DNA of 64,000 nt from Macrostomum lignano (GCA_002269645.1 NIVC01000250.1:172650-236649); one strand, 5' to 3'. Positions 45,365 through 64,000 are shown, counted from the stretch's first letter. Notes: generated by a model from the letters alone, not told the origin. A program made the numbers and translations.

Positions 45365-48300
45365 ATGGGCTGCTGCTTTTCAAAGCACGCGGCAGAGCAA
45401 CCCGGCCGGAGGTACATTGAAGATCCGCAGCAGCTGCAGCAGCAGCAGCAACAGCAGCAACTGGCGCCTGTTGCACAGTGGAACAACCACATGGGCCATG
45501 CTGACGCGATACCAGGCCACATGCAGCCGCAGAGGCCGGGTAACAAATTCATGGGGCCATATCCGCAGCAGCCCATCGGCCGGCCCAACCAGCCAATGCC
45601 GATGGTTGAGCCGCAGCCTCCGCCACAGCAGCGCATCTTGGTCAGGGCGCTCTACAACTACAATGCCCAGAATCCTGACGATCTGGACTTTCGCAAAGAC
45701 GACCTAATGGAGGTTTTAGGCGACACCTCCGAGCCCTGGTGGTACGCCAGGCACCAGCGCAGCTCCAAGGCCGGCTACATACCGTCTAACTATGTGCTCA
45801 TTGACGACGGCAAGCCGACTTCGCTCAGCTCCTGGTTCGAAATCAGCCGCAGAGATGCTGACAGGTTTGTGTGGTCTGCAGTGCCGCTTGGTTTTGCTTT
45901 GGCCACTGGTTGGTATACCCTAACCCCTGACACTCCAATCCCTGACACCCTAACCCCTGACACTCTAATCCCTGACACCCTAACCCCTGACACTCCAATC
46001 CCTGACACCCTAACCCCTGACACTCCAATCCCTGACACTTTAACCCCTGACACTCCAATCCCTGACACCCTAACCCCTGACACTCCAATCCCTGACACCT
46101 TAACCCCTGACACTCCAATCCCTGACACCCTAACCCATGACACTCCAATCCCTGACACCCTAACCCCTAACACCAATCCCTGACACCCTAACCCATGACA
46201 CTCCAATCCCTGACACCCTAACCCATGACACTCCAATCCCTGACACCCTAACCCCTGACACTCCAATCCCTGACACCCTAACCCATGACACTCCAATCCC
46301 TGACACCCTAACCCCTGACACTCCAATCCCTGACACCCTAACCCATGACACTCCAATCCCTGACACCCTAACCCATGACACTCCAATCCCTGACACCCTA
46401 ACCCATGACACTCCAATCCCTGACACCCTAACCCATGACACTCCAATCCCTGACACCCTAACCCCTGACACTCCAATCCCTGACACCCTAACCCATGACA
46501 CTCTAATCCCTGACACCCTAACCCCTGACACTCCAATCCCTTAACACCCTAACCCCTGACACTCTAATCCCTGACACTGAAATCCTTTACACCCCAACCC
46601 CTGTCCCTGACACCCTAACTTCTGACACTTGAATACTTGATACCCAAACCCCTGGCCCCTGACACTTAAATCTTTGACACAACAACCCCTGACAGCTTAC
46701 TTCCGACACTTCAATCCCTGACACCACAACTCCTGACACCCCAACCTTTGACAGCCTAACTTCTGACATTCCAATCCCTGACATCCCATTCTCTGACACC
46801 CTAACTCCTGACAATTCGATCTTTGACTCCCCAACCCGTGCCACTGACACATTAATCCCTGATACCCCAATCCCCGGCCGCCAAAGCAGTTGTCTGGTAC
46901 AAGAAATGTCAAACCTGTGAGATGCAGGTGGCAAATCAGTAGTTGGGAGGGGGCGCGATAATCCCCCCTCCAGCTAAGCCCCTGCCCTGACAGCCGCATC
47001 CCTGTCTATCCAAGCCTTTCGATAAGTGCCACCCAGTTTCAACTGATTCCTGAGTTTGATATTGAAATTCTATTAATATTTGATTTACAAGAAGTTATTT
47101 TTGGTTTAGACCAATTAGTTAAATTTTGTATCAGCTGAAAATAGAATTCGCTATAAAATTGCCAAAAAACATCGTCAAAAGTAGAACTTTTAAATCTAGA
47201 ATTAGAAATTTGTTTAACAAAAATTGATTGAACTCCTGATAAAGGGTGATGGTAAGGTGGGGACAATCCAATTAGAAAATGACCAGATGAAAGGAAAGAG
47301 ATGACAGCGCTAAACAGAGGCCCAGACAGCTGGCTGTCGTACGATTGAGGACCAGCCCCTGAAGCACCGGGAGTGTACATGCGTGTGTACTACAGAATGG
47401 GCAGAATTGCCGTTAGCCCTGCGAATATTGTTATTAAGCGTCAATGTGAGTAGCTTTAACCGCATGTCACCTTCTCCCCAGGCACCTGCTGATGCCTGGC
47501 AACCCATCGGGCACGTACATCCTGCGGCCCAGCTCGTCCGGTCACTACGCTCTCAGCGTTCGAGTGAAAGATCAAACAAAGGAGAATAATTTCATGGTTA
47601 AGCACTACAAGATCAAAAACATGGACAATGGCGGATTCTACATATCGCCGAGAATCACCTTCAACTCCATGCAGGACCTGCTTAGTCATTATCAGGAGCG
47701 CACCGACGGCCTGTGCTGCAAGCTCACCATCCCGTGTCCCCGCGCCTACAAACCGCCTGTGCAGTTCCGCGACATCGAGGTGAACCGCGATTGCATCCAG
47801 CTGCTGCAGAAACTTGGCAACGGCTCCTTCGGCGAAGTGTTCCTAGGCAAATGGAACAACAGCGTTGAGGTGGCTGTGAAGACCATGAAGCCGAACACTA
47901 TGGAAGCTCAGAAATTCATCTCGGAGGCGCAGATCTTGCATCGATTGAATCACCCGAGAATTGTGCAGATTCTCGGTGTTTGCACCACGGGTGAGTACTG
48001 CCCCAGTTCTTAATCGCTAGATCCTCAAAATTTCATGCCTAGAGATCCTATTCTTCTTAGAATCATAATTGTAGTCCATTTTTAAGAATAGTTCAGATAC
48101 CACCCGGTTGTATTTGTTAGAATGGCCGAGTTGATCTCATTTAAAAAACTAGACTATTTAAACTAATTTCTTAAAATGGCCGAGTTGACCTCACTTCTAA
48201 AAATAGACAATTTGGACCAATTTCTTAGAATGACCGAGTTAATTCCTTTTCTTAGAATGACCAAATTGATCTTATTTCTTAGAATAACCAAATTGATCGC

Positions 48301-49596
48301 ATTTCTTAGAATAACCAAGTTGATCTCATTTCTTAAATAACCAAGTTGATCTCATTTCTTAGAATGACCAAGTTGATCTCATTTCTTAGAATGACCAAAT
48401 TGATCTTATTTCTTAGAATGACCAAATTGATCTTATTTCTTAGAATAACCAAGTTGATCTCATTTCTTAGAATGACCAAATTGATCTTATTTCTTAGAAT
48501 TACCAAATTGATCTTATTTCTTAGAATAACCGAGTTGATCTCATTTCTTAGAATGACCAAATTGATCTTATTTCTTAGAATTACCAAATTGATCTTATTT
48601 CTTAGAATAACCGAGTTGATCTCATTTCTTAGAATGACCAAATTGATCTTATTTCTTAGAATTACCAAATTGATCTTATTTCTTAGAATAACCGAGTTGA
48701 TCTCATTTCTTAGAATGACCAAATTGATCTTATTTCTTAGAATGACCAAATTAATCGCATTTCCTGAAACGGCCAACTTGATCCTACTTTTTGGAATCGC
48801 CAAGATAATTCTATTTCTTAAAAAAACTCAAACATTTTCTGAGAATATTATTTAAATTCCAATTCCTAGAAACACATTCACAATTCATTTAAGTTCGATT
48901 TCTTAGAATCTTCTTCAGATCCCATTCCGCCAAATTTTTCCCATTCTAAGAAATCAAAAACTATTTGAACTGGCAGGTGAGCCAATCTACATCATCACTG
49001 AGCTGATGGTGAACGGAGCACTGCTAGACTATCTGCGCAAAGACAACGGATTGAATCTGAAATTCGAGAATCTCATCGACATGATGGCCCAAATATCCGA
49101 CGGCATGGCCTATTTGGAGAGTTTGAACTTCGTGCACAGAGATCTTCGGGCCGCCAATATTCTGGTGGGCGACAATAACTGGGTGAAGGTGGCGGACTTC
49201 GGGCTCGCCAGGATGACCGCTGAAGACGACATCTACACGGCCGACGAGGGCGCCAAGTTCCCCATCAAGTGGACAGCGCCTGAGGCTGCTCAGAACCGAA
49301 TGTTCTCAGTCAAATCCGACGTCTGGTCGTTCGGCGTGCTCATGTGGGAGATTGTCACCTACGGCCGCGCGCCCTACGTCGGCATGGCCAACCGCCAGGT
49401 GCTAGAAGAAGTGTCCAAAGGCTACCGCATGCCGAACCCGCACAGCGGACACGTGTACTGCGACAACAACATCTACCAGCTCATGCTGGAGTGCTGGAGC
49501 GCCAATCCTGACAGCCGGCCGACATTCGCCTATCTGAAGGACGTCTTTGAGAACTATAACGTTGCCACGGAGATTCAGTACGTGGATAAGCGTTGA
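45365..49596 (+). CDS. Src-family non-receptor tyrosine kinase (Src42A/FRK-like), 542 aa, 3 coding exons
   Basis: Exons 45365-45864, 47482-47990 and 48977-49596 (phases 2,1). MGCC acylation start, Gln/Pro-rich unique region, SH3 ALYNY..WW..GYIPSNYV, SH2 YILRPS, GNGSFG, VAVK, HRDLRAAN, DFG, DDIY, KFPIKWTAPE, C-tail EIQY. Confidence 0.95.
45917..46870. repeat. 30-bp (2x15) minisatellite with CCCTAACCC-like core, Src intron 1
   Basis: Unit cctaacccctgacactccaatccctgacac; decays after ~46570. Confidence 0.95.
48220..48760. repeat. 27-bp minisatellite, Src intron 2
   Basis: Unit atttcttagaatgaccaaattgatctt. Confidence 0.95.
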
Positions 49597-50387
49597 ATGT
49601 GGCAATTGCTGTAAAGAACAAAAGGTGTTCTCTTCATAAAAATTTCTTTTCTGACTTGCTCTCCTATGTACATTTTTATTACTAGTAAGTTTCCTGCGAC
49701 GTTGACTTTTTTTAGCCTGCAAAAAAATTATAAATTTATTGATTAGTTCAATAATAGAAAAGCAAGTAGTACATTAGCTTGTTAGCTTGTCCTAATTCTG
49801 AGAAATGTATGTGGCTACAATGAGACTCTCATTCTAGCTCGTAAATCAATTCTGCTAAAATTCGTTGTTGCTATTAATCTACTTTAAAAATCTAGATTAA
49901 TTTGTTCTATTATATTGCGGTTTATATCTTTGCTTTGTTGGAACCTTAACATGCTTGTTTGGTCTGTTTTTACTGAATCAGGTCCCCCCTCTGACTCTTG
50001 ATTCAATCCCAATAAATGTTACCTGACGATAGTTACTAAATCTTTTAAATTGTTATAATAAAATTGCTGCTTTGGATACATATCGGCTGAGACAATCTAT
50101 GCGTTTGTTTTAGTTTTGCTTGCAGCCGGCAGAAAGTCTGCTAGCTGTTTTGCTGTCTTGGTGCGGTCTTTCTGGAGAGCACTGGCAAGTTTTGGCCAGC
50201 CTTTTCTCTCTCTCAGTCCTGATGTAACCCGACCCGTCTCCGCCAGTCAGCTACCATGTTTGCATGCCTAACTAGCTGCTCACCTGGTTCTAGTTGCTGA
50301 GCGCAGAAAATATGCCTTTTTTCCTTCTTGTTTGTTCCTATTGTGCTGCGCTTTGCTATGCTGTAATGCAGATTTTTATGGAACCTT

Positions 50388-51742
50388 CCTGATCATTCAG
50401 TGAGTCACCCGCCACCCCCTCTGATCATTCAGTGAGTCACCCGCCACCCCCTCCCTGATCATTCAGTGAATCACCCGCCACCCCGTCCCGGATTATTCAG
50501 TGAGTTACCCGCCATCCCCTCTCTGATCATTCAGTGAGTCACCCGCCACCCCCTCCCTGATCATTCAGTGAATCACCCGCCACCCCCTCCCGGATCATTC
50601 AGTGAGTTACCCGCCATCCCCTCTCTGATCATTCAGTGAGTCACCCACCATCCCCTCCCTGATCATTCAGTGAGTCACCCGCCATCCCCTCCCTGATCAT
50701 TCAGTGAGTCACCCGCCATCCCCTCCCTGATCATTCAGTGAGTCACCCGCCACCCCCTCCCTGATCATTCGGTGGGTCACCCGCCACCCCCTCTCTGATC
50801 ATTCAGTGGGTCACCCACCATCCCCTCCCTGATCATTCAGTGAATCACCCGCCACCCCCTCCCTGATCATTCAGTGGGTCACCCACCATCCCCTCCCTGA
50901 TCATTCAGTGAATCACCCGCCACCCCCTCCCTGATCATTCGGTGGGTCACCCGCCACCCCCTCTCTGATCATTCAGTGGGTCACCCACCATCCCCTCCCT
51001 GATCATTCAGTGAATCACCCGCCACCCCCTCCCTGATCATTCAGTGGGTCACCCGCCACCCCCTCTTTGATCATTCAGTGAATCACCCGCCACCCCGTCC
51101 CGGATTATTCAGTGGGTCACCCGCCACCCCCTCTCTGATCATTCAGTGGGTCACCCACCATCCCCTCCCTGATCATTCAGTGAATCACCCGCCACCCCCT
51201 CCCTGATCATTCAGTGAGTTACCCGCCATCCCCTCTCTGATCATTCAGTGAGTCACCCACCATCCCCTCCCTGATCATTCAGTGAGTTACCCGCCACCCC
51301 CTCCCTGATCATTCAGTGAATCACCCGCCACCCCCTCCCTGATCATTCAGTGAGTTACCCGCCATCCCCTCTCTGATCATTCAGTGAGTCACCCACCATC
51401 CCCTCCCTGATCATTCAGTGAGTTACCCGCCACCCCCTCCCTGATCATTCAGTGAATCACCCGCCATCCCCTCTGATCATTCAGTGAGTCACCCACCATC
51501 CCCTCCCTGATCATTCAGTGAGTTACCCGCCACCCCCTCCCTGATCATTCAGTGAGTCACCCGCCATCCCCTCTGATCATTCAGTGAGTCACCCGGCACC
51601 CCTCTGATCATTCAGTGAGTCACCCGGCACCCCCTCTGATCATTCAGTGAGTCACCCGCCATCCCCTCCCTGATCATTCAGTGAGTCACCCGGCACCCCC
51701 TCTCTGAACATTCAGTGAGTCACCCGGAACCCCCTCCCTGAT
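50388..51742. repeat. 34-bp minisatellite, ~40 copies
   Basis: Unit tgatcattcagtgagtcacccgccaccccctccc. Confidence 0.95.
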
Positions 51743-52769
51743 TGCTTGCTATTTAATTCTGATGTGTTTGATTCAGTGCTACTTTATATGTTTTGTTAAA
51801 TATTTGTACAGTTAATCAAGCGCAGTCTCTCTGTCCCTAGCTGGGACGGGTTCTTTCTGTCAGCATGAGTGACTATTGACTAGTGACAGTTGCTGGTTGA
51901 TTGCCAGCTCACACCAAATCCAGTGAATCTTGCCACCCTGGTCGGTCACTGTTCAAATGTGTTTTTTTCTCTTTCCTGCTGTCCTGTGTGCTGCTTGGTT
52001 AATAATTGCTGTCTATATTAATTATTGTCTAATCGAGAATTATAAATTAACTATTCTAGTTGTCTCAAAAATTGTTTTCTTTCTGTTTACAACAATAAAG
52101 CTAATGATAATAGCATCTATACTTTATTTATTTGTACAACGCGAATACTTGATGCTAATATTTATATTTATATTTGTTTGTTTAAACTGGAACTGTAAGA
52201 TCTAGTGTTAATTATATTGAGAAAATTAGTGGCACATTTATAAATTATTTTAATTGACCAATGTCTGTCCCCAGTGCGTTGCCGACAATTACTGTGCGTA
52301 ATTATTTGTTTTAACGGCTTGCTTATATGCGGTTTGGTCACCCCTGCGAGTTCTACAAAATATAACAAAAGGCCATGTAATTTCTAATGAAAGTTCAGTC
52401 GCCTTTTTGTGTATTTTTAACTGAGTAGGCTTTCTTATCCGATAAATTTTATCAGAAAACGTTTAATTTATTTAATTGGTCAGGCCTTGACTAATTAACT
52501 AAATTGCTGTTTTTATGGTGTTCGCTTGATTTTTCCTATAGGGTTTTTCAATAGAACTGAACATTTATTTCAGACACGTTGAACTTGGTAATTAGATTGA
52601 ATTGGAAACCTTTTACTGAGGGTATGGTAGTCAGGGAGCTCTGCGCAATTGCAGACTTTTAGGCTGGCTGAGGAAGTAACTGAATTTCATAAAATTCTTT
52701 TAAGTATTCGAAATATCTTGCTTTTATTATTGCTACTGACTTTGAGAAAGGAGCCAGAAGGGAGAGTGC

Positions 52770-53140
52770 AGGTGAGATGGAGAGGGAGATGGATAGTGAG
52801 AGTGGGTATGAGAAGGTGAGTGGATATGAGGGAGAGTGGAGGGTATGAGAGGCAGAGTGGAGGGTATGAGAGGCAGAGTGGAGGGTGTGAGAGGCAGAGT
52901 GAAGGATGTGTGAGAGATAGAATGGAGGGTGCGAGAAGCAGAGTGGGGGTGTGAGAGGCAGAGTGGAGGGTGAGAGAAAGAGTGGAGGTTAAGGGAGGCA
53001 GAGTGGAGGGTGTGAGAGAAAGAGTGGAGGTGTGAGGCAGGGTGGAGGTTGTGAGAGGGAGAGTGGAGGGTGTGAGAGGGAGAGTGGAGGGTGTGAGAGG
53101 GAGAGAAGAGGGTGTGAGAGGCAGAGTGGAGGGTGTGAGG
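52770..53140. repeat. Purine-rich degenerate ~21-bp repeat
   Basis: gagaggcagagtggagggtgt variants. Confidence 0.85.
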
Positions 53141-53899
53141 GACAAAATAAGTTTTATACGGTATAAAGTAAGTAGCCAGTTCTACTAAAGTAAATTTGGT
53201 AGAAGTAAATATATAACCCTTTAATAGAATGTAATACATCTCTATTACATGTATTATGCATTTGGAATTGGCCAACATGTGCGAAGCCTATAAATTTTTG
53301 GATAGATTGTGACCGAATTTAGCTACTTAGCTGCGTAAACTACATGTAATTGATGAAGAAACGATAAAAAATTCAGGTGTTGGCCTACTACTATACAGTT
53401 CATGCGTGTTTTACCGGTATAGATTATTGCATGTTTATTCGACAGTTCAGTATTGCTGCATCTGAACATATCGCACAGGTGTGATGCAAATCTGCACTGG
53501 CAGTATTGCATATACACGTGTATATCTGGCTATGTGGCTACCGTTTCTCACCAAATTTGACGCAAAGTTTATACATGCATTTGAAGTAGTCAGTAGTGTT
53601 TGAGTAGTAAATTAAATAAAAAGCGAGTCGCTTTGATGAGTTCGTATTTATATTATGAAAACAATTTGAGTTTTAGCTTCTGTTCAGAATTTAACAGTGG
53701 TACTATGAAAGTGTAAGGCATAGTGTAAGGCACATTTTCAACACTTATAATAAATCTGCTTAATACATGTACAAGTGTAACTTATGTTCATTCAAACTTA
53801 CATAACTCTTGTGTTGCTAGCCAATACATTTAGAATGTACAATTAGTTGGCATTTGCAAGTACATGTAGGCTACATGTAAATAACCCTTTTCCCATTCA

Positions 53900-54496
53900 C
53901 TGTCTGTCACTGCCAACCGTCTGTCACTGCTAACTGTCACTATTAATTGTCACTGCTAACTGTCACTGCTAACTGTCACTGTTAACTGTCACTTAATTGT
54001 CACTGCTAACTGTCACTGCTAACTGTCACTGCTAACTGTCACTGTTAACTGTCACTTAATTGTCACTGCTAACTGTCACTGCTAACTGTCACTGTTAACT
54101 GTCACTTAATTGTCACTGCTAACTGTCACTGCTAACTGTCACTGTTAACTGTCACTTAATTGTCACTGCTAACTGTCACTGCTGACTGTCACTGCTAACT
54201 GTCACTGCTAACTGTCACTGTTAACTGTCACTGTTAACTGTCACTTAATTGTCACTGCTAACTGTCACTGCTAACTGTCACTGTTAACTGTCACTTAATT
54301 GTCACTGCTAACTGTCACTGCTAACTGTCACTGCTAACTGTCACTGTTAACTGTCACTTAATTGTCACTGCTAACTGTCACTGCTAACTGTCACTTAATT
54401 GTCACTGCTAACTGTCACTACAACTGTCACTGTTAACTGTCACTGCTAACTGTCACTACAACTGTCACTGTTAACTGTCACTGCTAACTGTCACTG
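53900..54496. repeat. 13-bp tandem repeat (ctaactgtcactg)
   Basis: Direct inspection; related copies at ~55196-55275. Confidence 0.95.
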
Positions 54497-54632
54497 CGAA
54501 GCTGTTGCAGCCTACGTCAACGTTCTGATGGACATGCAGGATGCTGACTGGTCTGCTGCATTTCACTCGTGGTTTCAGCGTATGGAAAAGTGCATAGGTG
54601 CTGCAGGCGACTACTTCGAACAGGCCTAGCGC
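54497..54632 (+). mobile_element. Mariner-type transposase C-terminal remnant
   Basis: EAVAAYVNVLMDMQDADWSAAFHSWFQRMEKCIGAAGDYFEQA* matches the W..R..KCI...G.YFE terminus of mariner transposases. Confidence 0.65.
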
Positions 54633-55277
54633 TGATTTTGATTTCTGAAGTTCAGAAGCTAGTGAGGCTAAAGCCTTTCGGAGTGGACCCTCGTATGCAT
54701 AGTTTTGTTATCTTTGTGAAAACACAACAAGAAATTCAAAAAATTGGTTCTGAATTTGAGCAATCAAATATGCCTGGCCGTAGATGGGAGTAGATTGAGG
54801 GACTCCACTTGGTTAAATTTCGGTTTCGGTGAGCACAGAGAATCAGTTGCTTCTGCCTCAGTACGAGTATAGCTCGTAATCAATTTTTTAATTTGAAGGT
54901 CGGTGAAAAATGCTATACCGTAGCCTGGTAGGTTGACTGTATAAGTGAAGTGAGTTGCTATATAGGTGAAAATAAATAAAGAAGAAGTCTGATTTTCTCT
55001 GTATATTTTTGGGCATTTGACGTTCCATTGTTTCTACTGAGTCAGTAGACTGTGAAGGAGAAGGCGTAAAAATATGTGAATTTTGTAATTAACGAAATTT
55101 CTGTAACGAGTCAATATTGAAAAAATCTGTCGCTCAAAATTCTGTTGTCTGTGAAGATTCTGTACAGATTCGTTCTCAATTTTCTCAGCGGGTACCTGAC
55201 ACTGCCACTGCCAACTGTCACTGACAACTGTCACTGCCAACTGTCACTACCAACTGTCACTGTCACTGCCACTGCTG

Positions 55278-58200
55278 TCACCTCCCGGAACCCGGCCGCT
55301 CCGGCAGCGTCGCCACCCCCTTGGGCAGCTCCTCGCCCTCCGAGCACACTTGATTCTCGTCCTCGTCGTCTTCAGTTTGAAATCCGCCGCCGCCGAGGCC
55401 GTTCCCTCCGGCGGAGTTCGGCGCCGAGGCCGTGTAGGAAAGAAGGTCGGCCCGACGCTCGTGGAAACCTTTGTTACCGCCGCCGCCTCCATCGCCACCG
55501 CCGCCGCCGGAGCCCTTGCGCCGCGGCAGCTGCTGCTGGCGACCGGAGACCAGCAGCTGATCGGCGCTTGTTGGCTGTGACTGCGCCGGCGCCGCCTGTT
55601 GCATCGGCAGCGGCGCCAGAACGGCGCCAGGCGCGTCGGCCGCGTACATCACTGAGGCCTGGTGCAGCACGGCAGCCTGACGCTGCGCTGTCTGTCGCAG
55701 GAAGCACTCATCTTTGACCGCGTGAAGGCTGCGTTTGAGTACGGCGAACTTCTTCTCCCAGGCCTGGTCCGACTTGCGGGCCTCAGCGCGCAGGCGGCCA
55801 ATCTGCAGTTTTCGTGGGTCATTTGGTCATTTTGTCATTGGGTCATTCCATCATTGGGTCATTTGGTCATTGGGTCATTTGGTCATTGGGTCATTTGGTC
55901 ATTGGGTCATTTGGTCATTGGGTCATTTGGTCATTGGGTCATTTGGTCATTGGGTCATTTTGTCATTGGGTCATTTTGTCATTGGGTCATTTTGTCATTG
56001 GGTCATTTTGTCATTGGGTCATTTTGTCATTGGTCATTTTGTCATTGGGTCATTGGTCATTGGGTCATTTGGTCATTGGGTCATTTGGTCATTGGGTCAT
56101 TGGGTCATTCCGTCATTGGGTCATTTGGTCATTGGGTCATTTGGTCATTGAGTCATTTGGTCATTGGGTCATTTGGTCATTGGGTCATTTTGTCATTGGG
56201 TCATTTTGTCATTGGGTCATTTGGTCATTGGGTCATTTTGTCATTGGGTCATTTGGTCATTGGGTCATTTTGTCATTGGGTCATTTGGTCATTGGGTCAT
56301 TTTGTCATTGGGTCATTTGGTCATTGGGTCCCCAAGTCACCTATGCCCAGCCCCCCATTCCCACCGACCTGCCTCCGCAGCTCCTCCTCGCTGCGCCTCA
56401 GCTTCTCCACGTCCTTCAGCTGCGCCATTCGCTCGGCGTTGTCTCGCCGTTCGGCTTCGAGCGTCGATTTAGCCTCGGCGAGTTCACGGCGAACGGCGCC
56501 GAGTCGCTCGTCGGCCTCCTGGCGCTCTCGATCGGCGGCCGCGGCGGCTTCGGCGAGAGCGGCGCCCCGCGCCTCGGCAGCGGCTTCGGCGGCGGCCTCG
56601 GCGGCTCCAGTGCCGGCGCGGCGCCGCTCGGCCTCGAGCTGCTCAGTGGCGGCCGCCCAAGCCTCCATCTTGGCGTCCAGCGCCGATTGCAGCTTCTCGG
56701 CTTCATCGCGAAATTTGGCCGCCTCCTCCAGAGCGGCCGTCTGGTGAATCACAAAATCGGGCAGGGGGAGAGATTTACTACTGACAAGTAGCGAGTGCAG
56801 GGTTTATAGAATTTCATCAAATATTTCAGAAACAGCCGTACCTTCTCCGCAGTCAGCTGATCCGTCAGCTGATCCGCCTTCGCCAGCTCCTTCTCCAGCT
56901 TGCTGACTGTCTTCTCCAGCTCTTCAACGTCGACCTTGGCCGGCTTCTGCTCCTGCGGCTGCGCCTTCGACTGGTGCGCCATCATCTGCTGCTGCAGCTG
57001 CAGCTCCGCCGACTGGGCCTGCTGGCGCTTCGCCGAGTCGGCCAGCTCTGCGTCCGCCTCGGCCAGGGCTTCGTTTAGCCGGCCAACTTCTGTCTGCAGG
57101 TTGGCCACCTGGGCTTCGAGTTCGAGCACCCGGTTGCGCAGCTTCCTGGCCGCCGCTGGGCTCAGCGACTCCTGCTGGGACGGCTGCGGCGCCTGCGACG
57201 ACGCGGCGTCCTGCTTGCGCTTGCCAAACCCGGAGTCGTACATGCGGTGCACCTGGGGCGGGGAGAGGCGATGATCGACTCAGATCCCAGCCTCCTAGCA
57301 TCATCCGATCAGATCCGCCTCACGACATCATCTCGGATCCCAGCCTACAGCCTCATCGCAAGATTCTATCCTCCCAACCTCATCTCGGATCCCCCGCCTC
57401 TCAACCTCATCTCGGATCCCAGCCTCTCAACCTCATCTCAGATTCTATACTCTAATCATCATCAGGGATCCCAGCCTTTCAACCTCATCTCCAGATTCTA
57501 TTCTCTAAACATCATCTCGGATCCCAGCCTCTCAACCTAATCTCCAGATTCTATCCTCTAAACATCATCTCGGATTCCTGATTCTCGACCTCATCTCCAG
57601 ATTCTATCCTCTAAACGTCATCTCGGATTTCAGATTCTCAACTTCATCTCCAGATTTTATCTTCTAAGCATCTCCCAGATTCTCAACCTCATCTTTCTTG
57701 GTTGAAAGAAAGGAAACTAAAAAACAGACGTTGTCCAAATGTGTTTGAAAAACATGTGCAGCAAGCTGTGCTAATTTTAGACTAAATTGACACCAGCCAT
57801 AGACTATTAAATAGCAAAGCTATACTCGTATGTGTAACTATATTTTGTATTTGGTGTCATACACGTGTAGTGCACTTCTAGGCGCCTTTGGTCACTGGTG
57901 TACAACAGCACCAACACACTTAGAAGAGACCTTCTGAGAAAGTACACGGATGCGATACAGCCTTCTCAAACCGATTTAAGGTAAACCGCGAGAAATGCCC
58001 GCCTGGCAACGGCAGCTGTTGTACTCATCTGAGTTCGCGAACGCCTAAAAGAGCCATGGCCGATCAGCAAAATCGAAAGTCCAAAACCAGCCGCAAGGCC
58101 TCGTTGGACTCGGTTCGGCCAAAGAAGCCGCCACGAGACGATGAATATGCTCAGCAGCCTCCGCCACCGACGCCTCCGTCGCTTCCCGTGTCGGAGTACC

Positions 58201-61200
58201 CGACAGCCCGAGCACTACACGCCTACACAGCCGAATCAGCGGACGAGTTGGACTTTAAAAAGGACGACGTCCTGGACATCATCAGCGACCTCAGCAAGGG
58301 CTGGTGGTACGCCAGACGGCACCGGGGCAACAAGCTGGGCTACGTGCCCAGCAACTACGTCCTGTTGAACAACGCGGAAGTGACCCAGCAGCCGGGCTGG
58401 ATGGAGATCACCCGGTCGGAGGCTGACAAACTGCTGCTCCAGCCGGGCCTGCCAGAGGGCCTGTTCGTGCTCAGGCCCTGCTCAGTTGGCTGCTACTCCA
58501 TCAGCCTCCGAGTGAAGCACCCCACCAAGCCCAACTTCTACTCAGTGCAGCACTATCGAATGTCCATCACCTCCGCCGGGCTGTTCTGCATCTCGCCGGA
58601 GGCCACCTTCCACTCTGTCGGCGAGCTGCTTGCTCACTACGCACAGACTGCGGACGGCATGGCCTGCAAGCTGATGAAGCCGTTCCCGCAGCCTCCACCG
58701 CCGCCTCCAGCGGACCTCAGCCAGCTCGAGGTGAACCGAGACTGCTTCGTCATGTTGGAAGTTATCGGCCACGGCTCGTTCAGCGAGGTGCACCAGGCCA
58801 AGTTCAACAACTCCATCTTCGTGGCGGTGAAAACTCTCAAGCCAAACATGGAGGCTGAGCAGAACTTCATCCAGGAGGCGCGCCTGCTTTTGAAAGCTCA
58901 CCATCCGCATGTGCTGCAAATCATGGGTGTTTGCACCGACCGAGAGCCGCTGTACATCGTCACGGAGCTCATGACCAACGGCTCCCTGTTGAACTATCTG
59001 CGCAAAGACAAAGGCGTCCTGCTGAACATTGAGCACCTCCTGCTCATGAAGATGCAGCTGGTGGAGGCCATGTCCCACCTGGAGAGTCTGCGGATTGTCC
59101 ACCGGGACCTGCGCGCCGCCAACGTCCTTGTCGGCGAGGACGCGAGAGTGAAGCTGGCCGACTTCGGTCTGGCTCGCGAGCTGGACGACGCCGGGTGTAC
59201 ACCGGCCAAGGCGAGAAGTTCCCAGCTAAGTGGACACCTTCCGAGGCCGTGACGAAAGGCAGGTTCACCGCCAAGTCCGATGTCTGGTCGTTCGGCGTGG
59301 TGATGTGGGAGATCGTCACCTACGGCGGCGTGCCCTATCAGGGCCTGCAGAACCGCGAGGCGGTCGAGCTGGTCTCCAAGGGCTACCGGATGCCGAATCC
59401 GCACGGCGGGCACATCCGGTGCGACCCCAGCCTGTACCAAATCATGCTGGACTGCTGGAGTGCCAGCCCAGAGAAGAGACCAACGTTTGCTAAACTGAAA
59501 GACCAGCTCAAGGCCTACGCGGCTGAAAAGCACAGAGCGTCGCGCAGACGCGTTTAAACAAAACGACTTATTAATTTGTTAATTTGAATCGTTCAGTTGA
59601 GTTCATTCTTCTCTTCGGCCGGGTTATTTCTGCTTTCAGATAATTTCTTCATTTTCTATTTCTCGTGCAAAAACATTTGCATAAAATTTTCTTTGTTTGC
59701 TTTTTGGTTCTTTAAATTTGAGTTGAAATTGATCGATATGTTTACAGAGAAGGTTCAGTTACATTCTATCAATGAGAGAAATTGACACTAGGCAAAAATT
59801 CTACTGCGTGCAAGCAATAACAGCGATGCCAAATTTAAGCATAAAGGCATCATCAGTACAAGGCTGTCAGTTTAAATACGGCAGGCAGGCACCAGTTTAA
59901 ACAAAGAGGAGCCTGTTTAAAAAATGGCGCCAGATTAAACAAAAAGGTGACTGTTTAAATATAATGGCGCCAGTTTAAACAAAGTAGCCTGTTTAAATAT
60001 AATGGCACCAGCTTAAACAAAGTGGAGCCAATTTAAACTAAATGGCGCTAGTTTAATCAAAGAGGAGCCTATTTAAATGAAATGGCGCCAATTTAAACAA
60101 CAGGGAGCTTGTTTAAATAAAATGGCGTCAGATTGAACACAGAGGAGCCTGTTTAAACGAAATGGCGCCAGTTAAAACAAAAAGAAGCTTGTTTAAACAA
60201 AGAGGAGCTTGTTTAAATAAAATAGAGGAGGAGGTCCTGGCTTACAGAATAAGCAGATTTTTCTTGCAACTCCCTGAGAGCAATCTCATTATTTTCTCAC
60301 CTTGATCACTGCCTCATCCATCTCTGCCCGATGCGCCTTCCGCGCTCTGTCCAGCTGTTTAACGTAGGACCTCTCCAGCCTGTTAATCTGCTCGTTCATG
60401 TGCGCCTGCAGGTTCACCGCCCGGCCTCGGATCTCCTCTTCCAGTTGGGCCTGTGGTCATGGTTTATGAGCGGTTAATGAACTGACTTTGTATGAGCAGT
60501 TAATAAACTGTCAGAGGTGATTTACAGCAGTGAGTGACCTGACTGAAGCTAAGGTCATAATAAGAAAAGGCCTATGAGCGGTGAATGACCTGACTCTATG
60601 AGCAAAGAATGGTGATGAACAGCAAATGACCTGACTCTATGAGCAAAGAGTGATGATGAACAGCAAATGACCTGACTCTATGAGCAAAGAATGGTGATGA
60701 ACAGCAAATGACCTGACTCTATGAGCAGAGAGTGATGATGAACAGCAAATGACCTGACTCTATGAGCAAAGAGTGATGATGAACAGCAAATGACCTGACT
60801 CTATGAGCAGAGACAATTTATTAAAATCAATTAACCTGCAGGTAGCCGCTGGTGAGTCCGAATTCTCGTTTGAGCTCGGCTGCCCGGGCCCTCAGCGCTA
60901 GCAGAGACGCCGTCAGCTCGTTCAACGGCCGGATCTCGCTGCTGTCAGTGTTGGTGGCGCGGTCTCCGCTGTGCTTGCCGATTTTCAGCTGGTCGGGAGA
61001 TGGCTGGCGGTCGGAAATCCTCCTCGTCTGATGACGAATCTTCAACTGGCCGCTCAGCTTCCTGTACCTGTGCTGGATCATCTGCGTCAGCTTCTTCCGG
61101 TTGCTTGACTGCAGCATCCGCATCCTCCAGCGGTCTCTGTTCCTCGCCATCGGCGGCTTCCGCTTCAGTCTCGTCTGCTTCGGCAATGGCTTGCGGGATG

Positions 61201-61252
61201 GCGCCGCGGCGCTCTTGTTATTGGCCGCCACAATGTCAATTGCGTCAGACAT
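55278..61252 (-). CDS. C10orf67: C10orf67-like coiled-coil protein (DUF4709/DUF4724-like), 5 coding exons
   Basis: Exons 61252-60836, 60450-60301, 57252-56842, 56740-56369 and 55802-55278, all phase 0 GT-AG. DQLKIG..DRATNTDSSEI..L.EL and WEKKFAVLKRSLHAVKDE.F.R resemble, from memory, the N- and C-terminal conserved blocks of C10orf67. Confidence 0.75.
55817..56330. repeat. ggtcatt-based 8-9/17-18-bp minisatellite filling an intron
   Basis: (gggtcatttggtcatt)n variants. Confidence 0.95.
57270..57690. repeat. Degenerate ctcatctcggatcc repeat
   Basis: Recurrent aacctcatctc(g/c)gat. Confidence 0.7.
58056..59557 (+). CDS. Intronless divergent Src-family kinase (SH3-SH2-kinase) with one frameshift at 59193-59195; gene or recent pseudogene
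   Basis: ORF 58056-59252 plus ORF 59195-59557; adding one G gives ~500 aa. ALHAY..WW..GYVPSNYV, FVLRPC, VAVK, HRDLRAAN, DFG, KFPAKW, SDVWSFG. Confidence 0.9.
59888..60222. repeat. 40-bp (2x20) minisatellite, ~8 copies
   Basis: Unit aatggcgccagtttaaacaaagaggagcctgtttaaataa. Confidence 0.9.
60586..60810. repeat. 41-bp minisatellite, ~5.5 copies
   Basis: Unit tgacctgactctatgagcaaagagtgatgatgaacagcaaa. Confidence 0.95.
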
Positions 61253-63048
61253 GGCTGCAGTTGGTTTGAGTTTAAATTTAATTTATTTAGTTTGAATTTA
61301 AAAGAAATGAAGAGTTAATTTTTTCAAAGTATAAGAAAGCCTTATAAAAATGTTGATAGAGTGAAAAGCTGAGGTTTTAATAGAATTTTTAAATGTTTAT
61401 TGCAAAGTAAAAAAATCATCACAATTTAACTCAATTCTTATCCTATATTTTATCAATTGAAAATGAAAAGATATTTTCATATTATGAATTTATCAAACTT
61501 CAGCATAAATGAAGTTAAAGTGACAATAAACAACTTCATTAACTTTCAGTCAGTAGACTTTATTCATAATATGATTACTTTTGTATTTTATTAGTTTCAT
61601 TCTAGCAAATTTGGTAATTGTTTTAATTCCAATCAATCTAGTTGGGTCTTGAACTTATTTACATGGATAAAATAGATTCCCTGAGAAGCTAGTTTATCAG
61701 AGTATCACGTTTTTGGAAATTTTGGTAATCAAAAAGTGTACAACACTTAAAAAATGAATATAGCTGCATAATTGTAGCTACTAAAATATCATATACAATG
61801 CTAATGAAAATGAAAAGTAATGACTTGCTATTCCATAATATTGTACAAGGGGCTCCTAATGACATTTGATAACATAATTCACAAATTACAATGACGACAG
61901 AGTGAGAAATTTAATGTGCATAAATGCCGGTAAACCTGGTGCAATTTGGCAAGAAGTTAATAACTGACCTAATAATATCTGATATCTAATATCTGATTTC
62001 GAACGGCATATGCTCAGTTCATGAGCTCAAATCTACGCATTGACAATTGTAACTTTGGCTATTTATTTTACAATATAATGGCTTCTGAAAGAGTAAATTG
62101 AATCGGTAATAAATTCACTTCGTTGTTATTGTAAACCAACTATAACAAAATATCATAACGTGGTGACAAAAATTTAGCAAAATCTATACAGTTCATTAAA
62201 AAAACTATTAATACAGAAAGTTTTGTTAACGTGGAAAATTAAATCAGCATTGAAACTAAATACTAGCTAAAACATGGATCTGGAGAAGACGGTATCACAG
62301 GGTAGCCAAAAATTGCTTAAGAATTGCTTTATAATAATAATTCTCAAAGAACTTTCAAATGCTCATTATACAACGAGTACCTTGTACTGTACATATTCGA
62401 TCTATATATCAGACTTCGTACATTACTCGTTACATTTTTAAGTGTGAAATAAGAAAGCTCCCTACTTGCAGCTAAGCATGCAGCTTGATTTAGCCAATAT
62501 ACATGTAGTTTACACGCTTGCATACAATTAGTAGTACACCTTGTATATCAACTCGACTTCACTCGAATTCATCGGCCGAAAAACTATATCGTATACCTTA
62601 GTACTATAGCTAGCTGTAGCGAGAAAATTTTTCCAGCAAAGTGAATCTTCTCGTCCTGCAAAGCATGGGCACGCGCTCCCCAGCCTCCTCTGAGCTCAGC
62701 GCCGAGTGTGGGGATTCAGTTAACTAGCCATATATGTATGCGAGCAGGCCATGGCAGACTGAAGCCCTTGCACCGATATGACCAGTAATAAGCAAAGCAA
62801 CTTTTCTACTCTCTCTAAATGCTTGACAGCACTGCGACACAATTTTGCTTGCGACGAAGAAAATTGGTTCACAACAATGTTGAGCAGGACGAACTTGGCG
62901 CGCTCGCTAGGGCTGGCATGCCCAAATCTCGGCATTATTAGTCTCCATCCACAATCGTTATGGCTTATATGTACACAACTGTACATTCTTGGCACCTCTG
63001 CAAAGTCCCACCTAAGTACTTGCATAGTCTCATCTTATCGCCTCGTAA

Positions 63049-63190
63049 AACTCCATCTTATCAACTTGTAAAGTCCCATCTTATCGACTTGTAAAGTCCC
63101 ATCTTATCGACTTGTAAAGTCCCATCTTATCGACTTGTAAAGTCCCATCTTATCGACTTGTAAAGTCCCATCTTATCACCCTAAGTCCCA
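63049..63190. repeat. 23-bp tandem repeat, ~5-6 copies
   Basis: Unit taaagtcccatcttatcgacttg. Confidence 0.9.
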
Positions 63191-63578
63191 TGTGTGGAGA
63201 GCTACCAATAATAGTACAAAGCGTGGGTTCGCTTGTACTATTGGTACTTGTTGATTCGCTTCGATAAAATCAGTTCAGCGAAACGAGCAAAGAAAGTAAA
63301 AGAAATTTAGGATGCTTTTCTCTACTCTCAGCAGCTCTCTAAGCCTGCCATACATGCGCTCCAATAGCTTCTGCTCAGTCAGGTGTGTCTTCTAGTAAGA
63401 GAAGAAATGGAAAGTGGAAGGGCCTGAGAAGGACAGGCCAAATACTCTCGCACATAACCGGAGTGTGCTATAGATCAGTCTGCCTTGAAAGCAGTGTACA
63501 GAAATTGTTATTGAAGCTACAGATCTACGTGAATAAACTGATATAACTTTTCTAAAATAAATAAATGCCTTAATATTT

Positions 63579-64000
<422 letters not shown>

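What the first reader, a model, noticed from the sequence alone, without database searches (positions are those of the whole stretch)
58056..59557. v-Src-like intronless Src paralogue nested antisense in another gene, 8.5 kb from its likely parent
Seen: it shares lineage-specific blocks with the 45-49 kb Src (EVNRDC, LRKD.G, YRMPNPH.GH..CD) but lacks both of that gene's introns. It starts MADQQ (no Gly2, so no myristoylation) and ends LKAYAAEKHRASRRRV (no EIQY-type tail Tyr). It has a hexa-proline SH2-kinase linker and basic termini, and keeps the catalytic K, E, HRD, DFG and the activation-loop Tyr. It sits in intron 2 (57253-60300) of the C10orf67-like gene. Known: loss of the C-terminal Tyr removes Csk inhibition, as in v-Src; Gly2 is required for membrane anchoring. 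Inference: a retrocopy that became a Csk-independent, soluble (possibly nuclear or germline) tyrosine kinase. Heavy divergence with an otherwise preserved ORF suggests long purifying selection.
Basis: partly seen in the sequence, partly recalled or inferred. Interest (0 to 1): 0.75.

Follow-up and report, generated by a model that had tools for sequence, protein, structure and literature searches.

The report
Tail-less, non-myristoylated flatworm Src paralogue
This is a real, already annotated but unstudied flatworm (Macrostomum lignano) Src-type tyrosine kinase gene that has lost its membrane-anchor and "off-switch" sites, much as vertebrate SRMS has; it is probably an old tandem duplicate rather than a retrocopy, and the break in its reading frame in this window looks like an assembly error.

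Summary
The window is Macrostomum lignano DNA. At 58056-59557 (+) lies one of four genomic copies of gene Mlig030404, an SH3-SH2-tyrosine-kinase gene without introns. It sits antisense in intron 57253-60300 of a DUF4709 (C10orf67-type) gene, 8.46 kb downstream of a canonical Src gene.

A G-run (59193-59195) is one base short, just before the activation-loop Tyr. Three other copies are intact (500 aa). One of them matches the window over 11 kb with no substitutions and about 20 short indels, so this is very probably an assembly error.

The gene is under selection: dN/dS is about 0.28 between genomic copies (p=5e-4) and there are no indels, while the flanks differ by 7-8%. Constraint is about ten times weaker than on the neighbour, and the gene evolves about five times faster.

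The retrocopy inference is not supported. Three ancient Src introns are missing from all four M. lignano paralogues. The six introns these paralogues do have sit at unique positions. The neighbour groups with another paralogue rather than with this gene. There is no poly(A) remnant. An old tandem duplication of an intronless ancestor fits better.

Functionally it resembles vertebrate SRMS, by convergence. Interest is modest.

The parts
58056..59557 (+). Intronless Src-family paralogue (one genomic copy of M. lignano Mlig030404). It encodes 500 aa once a 1-nt deficit is repaired.
   Evidence: The repaired translation is 100% identical over 100% of its length to PAA46134.1/P0001.
59193..59195 (+). 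G-run one base short (GGG here, GGGG in the three other copies). It shifts the frame just before the activation-loop Tyr and is probably an assembly indel.
   Evidence: Window versus L001 shows 0 substitutions and about 20-23 short indels, mostly in G-runs, over 11.2 kb.
58056..58205 (+). N-terminal region of 50 aa: MADQQ (no Gly2), rich in basic residues and proline (RPKKPPR, QQPPPPTPPSLP). Predicted disordered.
   Evidence: AF2 pLDDT is below 50 for residues 1-46.
58209..58361 (+). SH3 domain. The ALYDY motif is changed to ALHAY. WW and P..Y are kept.
   Evidence: Pfam SH3_1, E=5.7e-15; Y55H deviation.
58395..58670 (+). SH2 domain. The phosphotyrosine-binding Arg of FVLRP is kept.
   Evidence: Pfam SH2, E=3.5e-11; alignment.
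58692..58709 (+). Hexaproline in the SH2-kinase linker (PFPQPPPPPPADL). It uses mixed Pro codons (CCT CCA CCG CCG CCT CCA) and is conserved in the divergent copy g3.
58752..59509 (+). Tyrosine kinase domain. Lys259, Glu274, HRDLRAAN, DFG and Tyr382 are kept. The Gly-loop is GHGSFS (third Gly changed to Ser) and APE is changed to PSE.
   Evidence: Pfam PK_Tyr_Ser-Thr, E=1.5e-83.
59198..59200 (+). Activation-loop Tyr codon (TAC, Tyr382). In frame only after the repair.
59525..59554 (+). C-terminal tail EKHRASRRRV. The column that holds the regulatory Tyr in 48 of 48 other sequences is substituted here.
57921..57923 (+). First in-frame stop upstream of the ATG. There is no alternative in-frame start between it and the ATG.
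45365..49596 (+). Canonical neighbour Src gene (Mlig024122g1, 542 aa). Starts MGCCFSK and ends ...EIQYVDKR. Exons are 45365-45864, 47482-47990 and 48977-49596.
   Evidence: Exact spliced match to P0124; Pfam.
45865..47481 (+). Neighbour intron 1 (phase 2, in SH2). Mostly a 30-nt minisatellite. Its position is unique to this gene.
47991..48976 (+). Neighbour intron 2 (phase 1, kinase N-lobe). Contains a 27/81-nt minisatellite. Its position is unique to this gene.
55278..61252 (-). Host gene (624-aa coiled-coil protein with N-terminal DUF4709, the C10orf67 type).
   Evidence: Gene calls at three paralogous loci; ORFs and Pfam.
57253..60300 (-). Host intron that contains the kinase gene on the opposite strand.
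   Evidence: Read on the minus strand, the donor is ...ATCAAG|GTGAGA at 60300 and the acceptor is ...CCCCAG|GTGCAC before 57252.

Best explanation
This locus is one of four genomic copies, in the recently duplicated Macrostomum lignano genome, of Mlig030404. That gene is a transcribed, single-exon, 500-aa SH3-SH2-tyrosine-kinase gene belonging by descent to the flatworm Src clade.

Shown:
- It is old (synonymous sites against the neighbour are near saturation).
- It evolves about five times faster than the neighbour.
- It is still maintained by selection.
- It has lost Gly2 and the C-terminal regulatory Tyr by substitution, and keeps the catalytic residues and the activation-loop Tyr.
- The frame break in this window is a single missing G in a G-run, in a stretch that otherwise differs from a sister contig only by indels.

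Inferred mechanism:
- The protein cannot be N-myristoylated and cannot be latched shut by Csk-type tail phosphorylation.
- It therefore probably acts as a soluble tyrosine kinase.
- Control would come from activation-loop phosphorylation and from its SH3 domain binding its own proline-rich SH2-kinase linker, with the hexaproline compensating for the lost tail latch.
- This makes it a convergent functional analogue of vertebrate SRMS.

Inferred origin:
- An old tandem DNA duplication of a Src gene that was already intronless in the Macrostomum lineage.
- The neighbour's two minisatellite-filled introns were acquired later.
- So the intronless state is retained, not produced by retroposition of the present neighbour.
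For: Identity and copies:
- The repaired protein is 100% identical to PAA46134.1. The cluster also holds g1, g3 and the window's truncated 398-aa product.
- Three intact 1503-nt single-exon copies exist. Each is nested antisense in the 624-aa gene, and two of the three loci (L002, L003) also show the Src neighbour upstream; L001 reaches only 5.3 kb upstream.

Frameshift as artefact:
- Window versus L001 shows 0 substitutions and about 20-23 indels of 1-2 nt over 11.2 kb.
- The assembly is PacBio/Canu polished with Pilon and has 180 Mb of non-repetitive blocks duplicated at 95% identity or more (PMC5730564).

Selection:
- dN/dS is 0.27-0.29 for this gene (p=5e-4) against 0.015-0.045 for the neighbour.
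- Between the window and L002 the CDS differs by 2.2% with no real indel, while the near flanks differ by 6.8-8.0% and carry many indels.

Rate and age:
- Tajima relative-rate test: 101 unique changes in this gene against 19 in the neighbour, p=7e-14.
- Against the neighbour pS=0.61 and dS is about 1.2.

Src descent:
- The neighbour-joining tree places it in the flatworm Src clade with 97% support.
- PDB sequence scores are Src 335 bits, Btk 295, Abl 275 and Csk 242.

Lost and kept sites.

Transcription: the GenBank models derive from stranded RNA-seq, after removal of antisense transcripts with at least 5-fold fewer reads.

Origin:
- Introns conserved between an annelid and two flukes are absent from all four M. 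lignano paralogues.
- The 2 + 3 + 1 introns of the other three paralogues are all at different positions.
- The neighbour and Mlig015610 share 17 exclusive derived residues, against 7 for this gene and the neighbour.
- A second tandem Src pair exists in the genome.
- No poly(A) tract lies at the 3' end.
Against: - The phylogeny is neighbour-joining only. The M. lignano cluster has 43-58% support, and the long branch could be misplaced.
- This gene's highest identity is still to the neighbour (51% against 46%).
- No orthologue from another species was available, so there is no cross-species dN/dS and no dating.
- Evidence for expression is indirect. It rests on how the annotation was built. No tissue data were found.
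- Twenty-one deviations at columns that are at least 90% conserved could impair catalysis or SH3 function. They include the third Gly of the Gly-loop changed to Ser, APE changed to PSE, and Tyr changed to His in the SH3 ALYDY motif.
- Which contig carries the indel error has not been proven.
- A 14/16 direct repeat flanks the gene (57784-57799 and 59779-59794). Only 3.7% of shuffles reach that score.
- The compensating role of the polyproline linker is inference only. AF2 domain arrangements were uninformative, because the control model of the neighbour also failed to match closed Src.
Confidence: 0.65

Rival explanations
1. Retrocopy. An mRNA of the neighbouring Src gene was reverse-transcribed and inserted into the DUF4709 gene's intron, which removed both introns at once.
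For: - The gene lacks both of the neighbour's introns.
- The neighbour is its most similar paralogue (51-52% identity).
- A 14/16 direct repeat flanks a 1,979-nt segment of plausible mRNA size, and 3.7% of shuffles reach that score.
- Reverse-transcriptase sources exist in the genome, for example a Ty3/gypsy-type pol at 26.6-30.5 kb.
Against: - The neighbour's introns are at positions found in no other Src gene examined. Its sister paralogue Mlig015610 has three different introns, so they were most simply gained after this gene's lineage had split off.
- A retrocopy landing 8.5 kb downstream on the same strand as its parent would be a coincidence in a 764-Mb assembly, whereas tandem duplication predicts exactly this.
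- There is no poly(A) tract next to the candidate repeat.
- A neutral 16-mer pair would be expected to retain only about 40% identity after a dS of about 1.2. The observed 88% means the repeat cannot date from the gene's origin.
Confidence: 0.15
2. The window's copy is a real, very young pseudogene. The 1-nt deletion is genuine in this chromosome copy, which is tolerable because the polyploid genome holds intact copies.
For: - The frameshift is in the deposited sequence and was annotated as a 398-aa product.
- M. lignano DV1 carries redundant chromosome copies.
Against: - Over 11.2 kb the window differs from the L001 contig by no substitutions and about 20 short indels, mostly in G-runs. That is the signature of unpolished long-read consensus errors.
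- The other three copies are intact, and the gene shows dN/dS below 1.
Confidence: 0.12
3. Pseudokinase or scaffold. The protein is kept for SH3, SH2 or proline-rich interactions, but its catalysis is crippled by the Gly-loop and APE changes.
For: - Unique substitutions at columns invariant in 48 of 48 other sequences (G243S, P396S), plus A395P and I391A.
- dN/dS is ten times that of the neighbour.
Against: - Every residue needed for catalysis (Lys259, Glu274, HRD-Asp, Asn356, DFG) and the activation-loop Tyr is kept.
- The third Gly-loop glycine is the least constrained of the three in active kinases (general knowledge).
- The non-synonymous differences between genomic copies are spread over all domains rather than concentrated in the kinase domain.
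Confidence: 0.1

Closest known systems
[quoted passage not shown]
   Same: - SH3-SH2-kinase architecture.
- No Gly2 myristoylation signal and no regulatory tail Tyr.
- Keeps the activation-loop Tyr (SRMS Y380).
- Has a distinctive N-terminal region.
- Lies next to a related kinase gene (SRMS is 1.5 kb from Brk).
Source: PMC7352994.
   Different: - Independent origin. This gene branches inside the flatworm Src clade (97%), so the resemblance is convergent.
- It has a hexaproline linker.
- It is intronless and nested antisense in another gene.
- It has never been assayed for activity or localisation.
v-Src (Rous sarcoma virus oncoprotein)
   Same: No C-terminal regulatory Tyr, so the Csk/SH2 latch is impossible.
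   Different: - v-Src keeps Gly2 myristoylation and needs membrane anchoring to transform cells (general knowledge).
- It arose by viral transduction, with replacement of the C-terminus.
- Here the tail Tyr is lost by substitution in a cellular paralogue that is under purifying selection.
Canonical Src-family kinases, e.g. the neighbour Mlig024122/013558, or c-Src and Hck
   Same: - Same domain order.
- Best PDB sequence matches (Src 335 bits, Hck 330 bits).
- HRDLRAAN, DFG and the activation-loop Tyr are kept.
- Shares the Macrostomum-specific MPNPH..CD motif.
   Different: - Lacks the MG start and the tail Tyr.
- Deviates at 21 highly conserved columns, against 5 for the neighbour.
- Evolves about five times faster.
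Csk
   Same: SH3-SH2-kinase architecture, no myristoylation and no tail Tyr.
   Different: - Csk lacks the activation-loop autophosphorylation Tyr (general knowledge); this protein has it.
- Sequence similarity is clearly lower (242 bits against 335 for Src).
- The tree places this gene within Src.
Processed retrogenes
   Same: Single coding exon. Lies inside an intron of an unrelated gene.
   Different: - No poly(A) remnant.
- No convincing target-site duplication.
- Tandem, same-strand position next to its relative.
- The relative's introns appear younger than the split.

Membership tests
Src-family kinases (by descent) | SH3-SH2-tyrosine kinase domain order | tested here: met
   Pfam SH3_1 (52-99), SH2 (117-195) and PK_Tyr_Ser-Thr (233-485).
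Src-family kinases (by descent) | Groups with Src rather than with Csk, Abl or Tec | tested here: met
   Neighbour-joining tree: flatworm Src clade with 97% bootstrap. PDB phmmer scores: Src 335 bits, Btk 295, Abl 275, Csk 242.
Src-family kinases (regulatory definition) | N-terminal Met-Gly myristoylation signal | tested here: not met
   Starts MADQQ, while 48 of 48 other sequences have Gly2. An in-frame stop lies 135 nt upstream. The RNA-seq-derived models start at the same ATG.
Src-family kinases (regulatory definition) | C-terminal regulatory Tyr (Y527 equivalent) | tested here: not met
   The tail is EKHRASRRRV, and the column is Tyr in 48 of 48 others.
Src-family kinases (regulatory definition) | Activation-loop autophosphorylation Tyr and catalytic Lys, Glu, HRD and DFG | tested here: met
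   K259, E274, HRDLRAAN, DFG and Y382 are present in the three intact copies. In the window Y382 is out of frame because of the 1-nt deficit.
Brk family (SRMS, Brk/PTK6, Frk) | Common descent with the vertebrate/cnidarian Brk-family lineage, with its own exon structure | tested here: not met
   The gene branches within flatworm Src paralogues and shares the Macrostomum-specific MPNPH..CD motif. It has no introns to compare. The resemblance to SRMS is functional and convergent only.
Csk family | No activation-loop Tyr; closest similarity to Csk | tested here: not met
   Tyr382 is present. Csk (1k9a) scores 242 bits against 335 for Src.
Processed retrogene | The parent's introns predate the copy, so their absence is derived | tested here: not met
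   The neighbour's two intron positions are shared with none of five other Src genes. The ancient introns are missing from all M. lignano paralogues. The neighbour is sister to Mlig015610, which has different introns.
Processed retrogene | 3' poly(A) remnant and flanking target-site duplication | tested here: inconclusive
   There is no A-tract downstream of the stop. One 14/16 flanking repeat exists and is reached by 3.7% of shuffles. Such signals would be expected to have decayed at a dS of about 1.2.
Processed retrogene | Dispersed insertion site unrelated to the parent locus | tested here: not met
   It lies 8,459 nt downstream of the neighbour on the same strand, in the window and at two other loci.
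Functional (selected) gene as opposed to pseudogene | dN/dS significantly below 1 and an intact ORF across copies | tested here: met
   dN/dS is 0.27-0.29, p=5e-4. Three of four copies are intact, and there are no indels although the flanks are indel-rich.
Functional (selected) gene as opposed to pseudogene | Transcription and tissue of expression | not testable with these tools
   Support is indirect only: the GenBank models come from stranded RNA-seq assemblies. The gene ID was not found in any held supplement.

The most novel reading that the evidence does not exclude
The intronless gene preserves the ancestral, intron-free state of the Macrostomum Src cluster. All six introns now present in its three paralogues would then be lineage-specific gains after duplication. 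Several of them are little more than length-polymorphic minisatellites. The cluster would be a dated before-and-after series for recent spliceosomal intron gain in an animal. Separately, the gene would be a convergent SRMS-like kinase whose lost tail latch is compensated by a hexaproline SH3-binding linker.
Probability: 0.4. Interest if true: 0.5.

Novelty: new member of a known kind. Interest (0 to 1): 0.3.

Why it matters
If the mechanism holds, a flatworm has independently built the same kind of kinase as vertebrate SRMS: Src-derived, not lipid-anchored, and without the Csk-controlled tail. SRMS regulation is still poorly understood. A second, independent case with an unusually proline-rich linker, in an animal where transgenesis works, could show how such kinases are kept in check.

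The locus also carries a caution for genome scans. A missing intron next to an intron-bearing relative does not by itself mean retroposition. Here the comparative data point to later intron gain in the relative.

On present evidence this remains an uncharacterised lineage-specific paralogue that is already in the public annotation.

Tried and rejected
- Expression data. I searched full text for the gene ID and the held supplements of four M. lignano papers for Mlig030404, Mlig013558 and Mlig024122, and found nothing; two further papers had no supplement text held. One large table was truncated when stored, so absence means little.
- Orthologues. The protein search found nothing closer than the gene's own genomic copies (97-100%) and the neighbour (52%). 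No sequences from other Macrostomum species were in reach, so cross-species dN/dS was impossible.
- dN/dS against the neighbour. Synonymous sites are near saturation (pS 0.61, dS about 1.2), so the ratio (about 0.35) is unreliable. I used differences between genomic copies instead.
- AlphaFold2 domain arrangement, to ask whether the SH3-linker clamp or the closed state is kept. The model is confident for each domain (pLDDT 86, pTM 0.74) but matches closed Src only at TM about 0.5. The control model of the canonical neighbour does the same, so the arrangement is uninformative.
- Target-site duplication and poly(A). There is no A-tract. One 14/16 flanking repeat is marginal (3.7% of shuffles) and too well preserved for the age of the gene.
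- Csk, Tec or Abl membership: rejected on scores and on the tree.
- A tiny intron or programmed frameshift at 59193. Rejected because homology is continuous across the site and the other copies simply have one more G.
- A classical nuclear localisation signal in the basic termini. By eye I saw no clear K-K/R-x-K/R match, so I dropped the nuclear idea as untested.

Full report
**What is in the sequence.**
- The six-frame ORF list shows two ORFs in different frames where the finding describes one: 58056-59252 (398 aa) and 59195-59557 (120 aa).
- The first frame reads ...VKLADFGLARELDDAG and then runs into nonsense. The second frame reads ...VYTGQGEKFPAKWTPSEA....
- Kinase homology is continuous across the junction, so the break is a one-base deficit at the G-run 59193-59195. 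It falls immediately before the activation-loop Tyr codon (59198-59200).
- Counting G59195 twice gives a 500-aa protein with Pfam SH3, SH2 and PK_Tyr_Ser-Thr domains.

**Organism and public status.**
- The repaired protein is 100% identical over its full length to PAA46134.1, 'hypothetical protein BOX15_Mlig030404g4' of Macrostomum lignano.
- Its 90% cluster has four members: g1, g3 and g4 (all 500 aa) and a 398-aa product on a 236,649-bp contig. That last one is the window's own truncated ORF.
- The Src gene at 45-49 kb is Mlig024122g1. My model (exons 45365-45864, 47482-47990, 48977-49596) reproduces the annotated 542-aa protein exactly.
- The GenBank annotation of this assembly was built from genome-guided, stranded RNA-seq assemblies. 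Antisense transcripts with at least five-fold fewer reads than the opposite strand were discarded (PMC5730564).
- The co-existence of the kinase model and its antisense host model at three loci is therefore indirect evidence that both are transcribed.
- All three intact models are single-exon, 1503 nt, with the same start and stop.
- An in-frame stop lies 135 nt upstream of the ATG with no start codon between them.

**The frameshift.**
- Aligned to the three other copies, the window's CDS is identical to g4 except that GGGG is GGG.
- Over the whole 11.2 kb shared with the g4 contig, blastn finds 0 mismatches and 23 gap openings. Most of the gaps are length differences in G-runs.
- The assembly is PacBio/Canu polished with Pilon and contains 180 Mb of non-repetitive blocks at 95% identity or more. 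Short-read polishing is weak in such regions.
- I conclude, at about 80% confidence, that the break is an assembly error and not a mutation.

**Setting.**
- The host is a minus-strand gene (CDS 55278-61252, 624 aa at the paralogous loci). Its first two exons match Pfam DUF4709 (34 bits, E=4e-8). I recall DUF4709 as the C10orf67 family domain; this was not checked here.
- On the minus strand its second exon ends ...ATCAAG|GTGAGA at 60300, and the next exon starts after ...CCCCAG| at 57252.
- The kinase gene lies wholly inside that intron on the other strand.
- The same nesting occurs on all three other contigs, and the upstream Src neighbour is seen on two of them (L002, L003).

**Selection.**
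- The genomic copies act as an internal test. Between the window/g4 haplotype and g3 there are 17 synonymous and 16 non-synonymous differences: dS 0.050, dN 0.014, dN/dS 0.285, p=5e-4 for a ratio below 1.
- For the neighbour Src the same contigs give dN/dS of 0.015-0.045.
- Between the window and L002 the CDS differs by 2.2% with no indel other than the artefact. The 330-350 nt on either side differ by 6.8% and 8.0% and carry many indels.
- The ORF is therefore maintained by selection, with constraint about ten times weaker than on the neighbour.
- Against the neighbour pS is 0.61 (dS about 1.2) and dN is 0.44. The split is at least 20 times older than the divergence between genomic copies.
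- A Tajima relative-rate test with Fasciola as outgroup gives 101 unique replacements in this gene against 19 in the neighbour, p=7e-14.

**Kinship.**
- In a neighbour-joining tree of 32 Src-type proteins the gene falls in a flatworm Src clade (97%) and, weakly (58%), in a M. lignano group with the neighbour and Mlig015610. It sits on by far the longest branch.
- The neighbour is its most similar relative (51%). However, the neighbour is closer to Mlig015610 (63%), to a metagenomic flatworm-like protein (62%) and to Fasciola 'Yrk' (59%) than to this gene.
- I counted residues absent from twelve non-Macrostomum sequences. The neighbour shares 17 such residues exclusively with Mlig015610. This gene shares 7 with the neighbour, 10 with Mlig015610 and 10 with Mlig007901.
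- If this gene were the neighbour's sister and had simply lost shared states, many three-way shared states would be expected. Only 4 are seen.
- The neighbour and Mlig015610 are therefore probably sisters, and this gene split earlier.
- MPNPH..CD is shared by all four M. lignano paralogues and by nothing else. That places the whole radiation within the Macrostomum lineage.

**Introns and the retrocopy claim.**
- I mapped exact exon structures by spliced matching of annotated proteins to their loci.
- Three kinase C-lobe introns are shared, in position and phase, among the annelid Dimorphilus and the flukes Fasciola and Cichlidogyrus. All three are absent from all four M. lignano paralogues.
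- The M. lignano genes have 2 introns (neighbour), 3 (Mlig015610), 1 (Mlig007901) and 0 (this gene). None of those six positions is shared with another gene.
- The most parsimonious history is an intron-free Src ancestor in this lineage, then duplications, then independent gains.
- The alternative needs the same six gains plus about 18 differential losses.
- The neighbour's introns are largely minisatellites (30 nt x 22; 27/81 nt x 20) and vary in length between haplotypes.
- There is no poly(A) tract after the stop.
- The only flanking direct repeat (14/16) is reached by 3.7% of shuffles. It is far too well preserved to date from an event with dS of about 1.2.
- Tandem Src pairs occur elsewhere in this genome (Mlig007901g2 plus a 528-aa MGNC... 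gene 2.7 kb downstream), and Cichlidogyrus has two Src-type genes on one 21.5-kb contig.
- Taken together, an old tandem duplication explains the locus better than retroposition of the present neighbour. Retroposition stays possible at about 15%.

**How it probably works.**
- By descent it is Src. PDB sequence scores are Src 335 bits, Hck 330, Btk 295, Abl 275 and Csk 242.
- It deviates from the consensus at 21 columns that are at least 90% conserved. The neighbour deviates at 5 and the other two paralogues at 11-12.
- Five of these columns are invariant in all 48 other sequences: Gly2 to Ala, Asp64 to Glu (SH3), Gly243 to Ser (third Gly-loop glycine), Pro396 to Ser (APE becomes PSE) and the tail Tyr.
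- From established Src biology, which is inference here: without Gly2 it cannot be myristoylated, and without the tail Tyr the Csk/SH2 latch cannot form.
- The SH2 phosphotyrosine-binding Arg and the SH3 WW and P..Y surface are kept. The first Tyr of ALYDY is His.
- The linker that SH3 binds in closed Src has become PFPQPPPPPPADL, through several substitutions plus one inserted Pro, encoded by mixed Pro codons. It is conserved in the divergent g3 copy.
- I read this as a strengthened or re-tuned SH3-linker clamp that compensates for the lost tail latch. This step is untested.
- AlphaFold2 gave confident domains and a disordered N-terminus (residues 1-46). Its domain arrangement did not match closed Src (TM about 0.5). 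The control model of the canonical neighbour failed in the same way, so nothing can be concluded from the geometry.

**Comparison with known systems.**
[quoted passage not shown] - The flatworm gene is not a member of that family by descent. The resemblance is convergent.
- v-Src is a poorer comparison because it keeps Gly2.
- Csk is excluded by the activation-loop Tyr, the similarity scores and the tree.

**Verdict.**
- The functional reading is plausible but not new in kind.
- The retrocopy reading is not supported.
- Germline or nuclear roles are untested.
- The gene is already in GenBank and UniProt as an uncharacterised tyrosine kinase.
- Interest is modest (0.3). The more unusual lead is the pattern of intron turnover in the M. 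lignano Src cluster.

Noticed in passing
window 45365-49596 and 58056-59557, compared with L002-L005: The contigs show mosaic kinship. The intronless gene in the window is nearly identical to the copy on NIVC01000119 (dS 0.003) and distant from the copy on NIVC01000412 (dS 0.05). The neighbour Src 8.5 kb away shows the opposite pattern (dS 0.018 to NIVC01000412, 0.054 to NIVC01000119). This suggests recombination or gene conversion between duplicated chromosomes, or a chimeric assembly.
   Followed up: partly
window 45865-47481 and 47991-48976; L006:3001-7018; L007:3001-4717; L008-L010: All six introns of three M. lignano Src paralogues are at positions shared with no other gene examined. Three kinase-domain introns conserved between an annelid and two flukes are absent from all four M. 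lignano paralogues. This looks like complete intron turnover in the gene cluster.
   Followed up: yes
window 45917-46577 and 48121-48763: The neighbour Src gene's introns consist largely of minisatellites (30 nt x 22; 27/81 nt x about 20). They differ in length between genomic copies (1579-1810 nt and 986-1094 nt). Intron 2 is bounded by a GTGAG direct repeat (cgg|GTGAGT ... cag|gtgagc).
   Followed up: partly
window 52754-64000 compared with L001:1-11242: Two contigs of the public assembly are identical in substitutions but differ by about 20 indels of 1-2 nt, mostly in G-runs. These include sites in host-gene exon 1 (about 60995 and 61200). Other gene models in this region may carry artefactual frameshifts.
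   Followed up: partly
window 26618-30508 (+): Two ORFs of a Ty3/gypsy-type LTR retrotransposon: 948 aa with aspartyl protease, RT and RNase H, then 318 aa with an integrase core.
   Followed up: no
L007:3001-4717 and 7457-7717: A second tandem Src pair in M. lignano. Mlig007901g2 has one 73-nt intron. A 528-aa SH3-SH2-kinase gene starting MGNCISRK follows 2.7 kb downstream on the same strand.
   Followed up: partly
window 50384-51742, 52828-53139, 53921-54505, 55817-56330, 57315-57672, 59888-60227: Long tandem arrays with units of 34, 21, 13/50/63, 16, 53/79 and 20/40 nt fill most non-coding DNA between and within these genes.
   Followed up: no
P0004 (Mlig015610) and P0009 (Fasciola 'Yrk'): These otherwise canonical Src proteins (MG start, tail Tyr) have no Tyr at the activation-loop autophosphorylation position in the alignment.
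   Followed up: no
window 57784-57799 and 59779-59794: A 14/16 direct repeat (AAATTGACACCAGCCA and AAATTGACACTAGGCA) brackets the kinase gene. A collinear 12/13 pair lies at 57748 and 59669. The 14/16 match is reached by 3.7% of shuffles.
   Followed up: partly
window 45427-45459: [quoted passage not shown] Mlig015610 has a similar Q-rich N-terminus.
   Followed up: no
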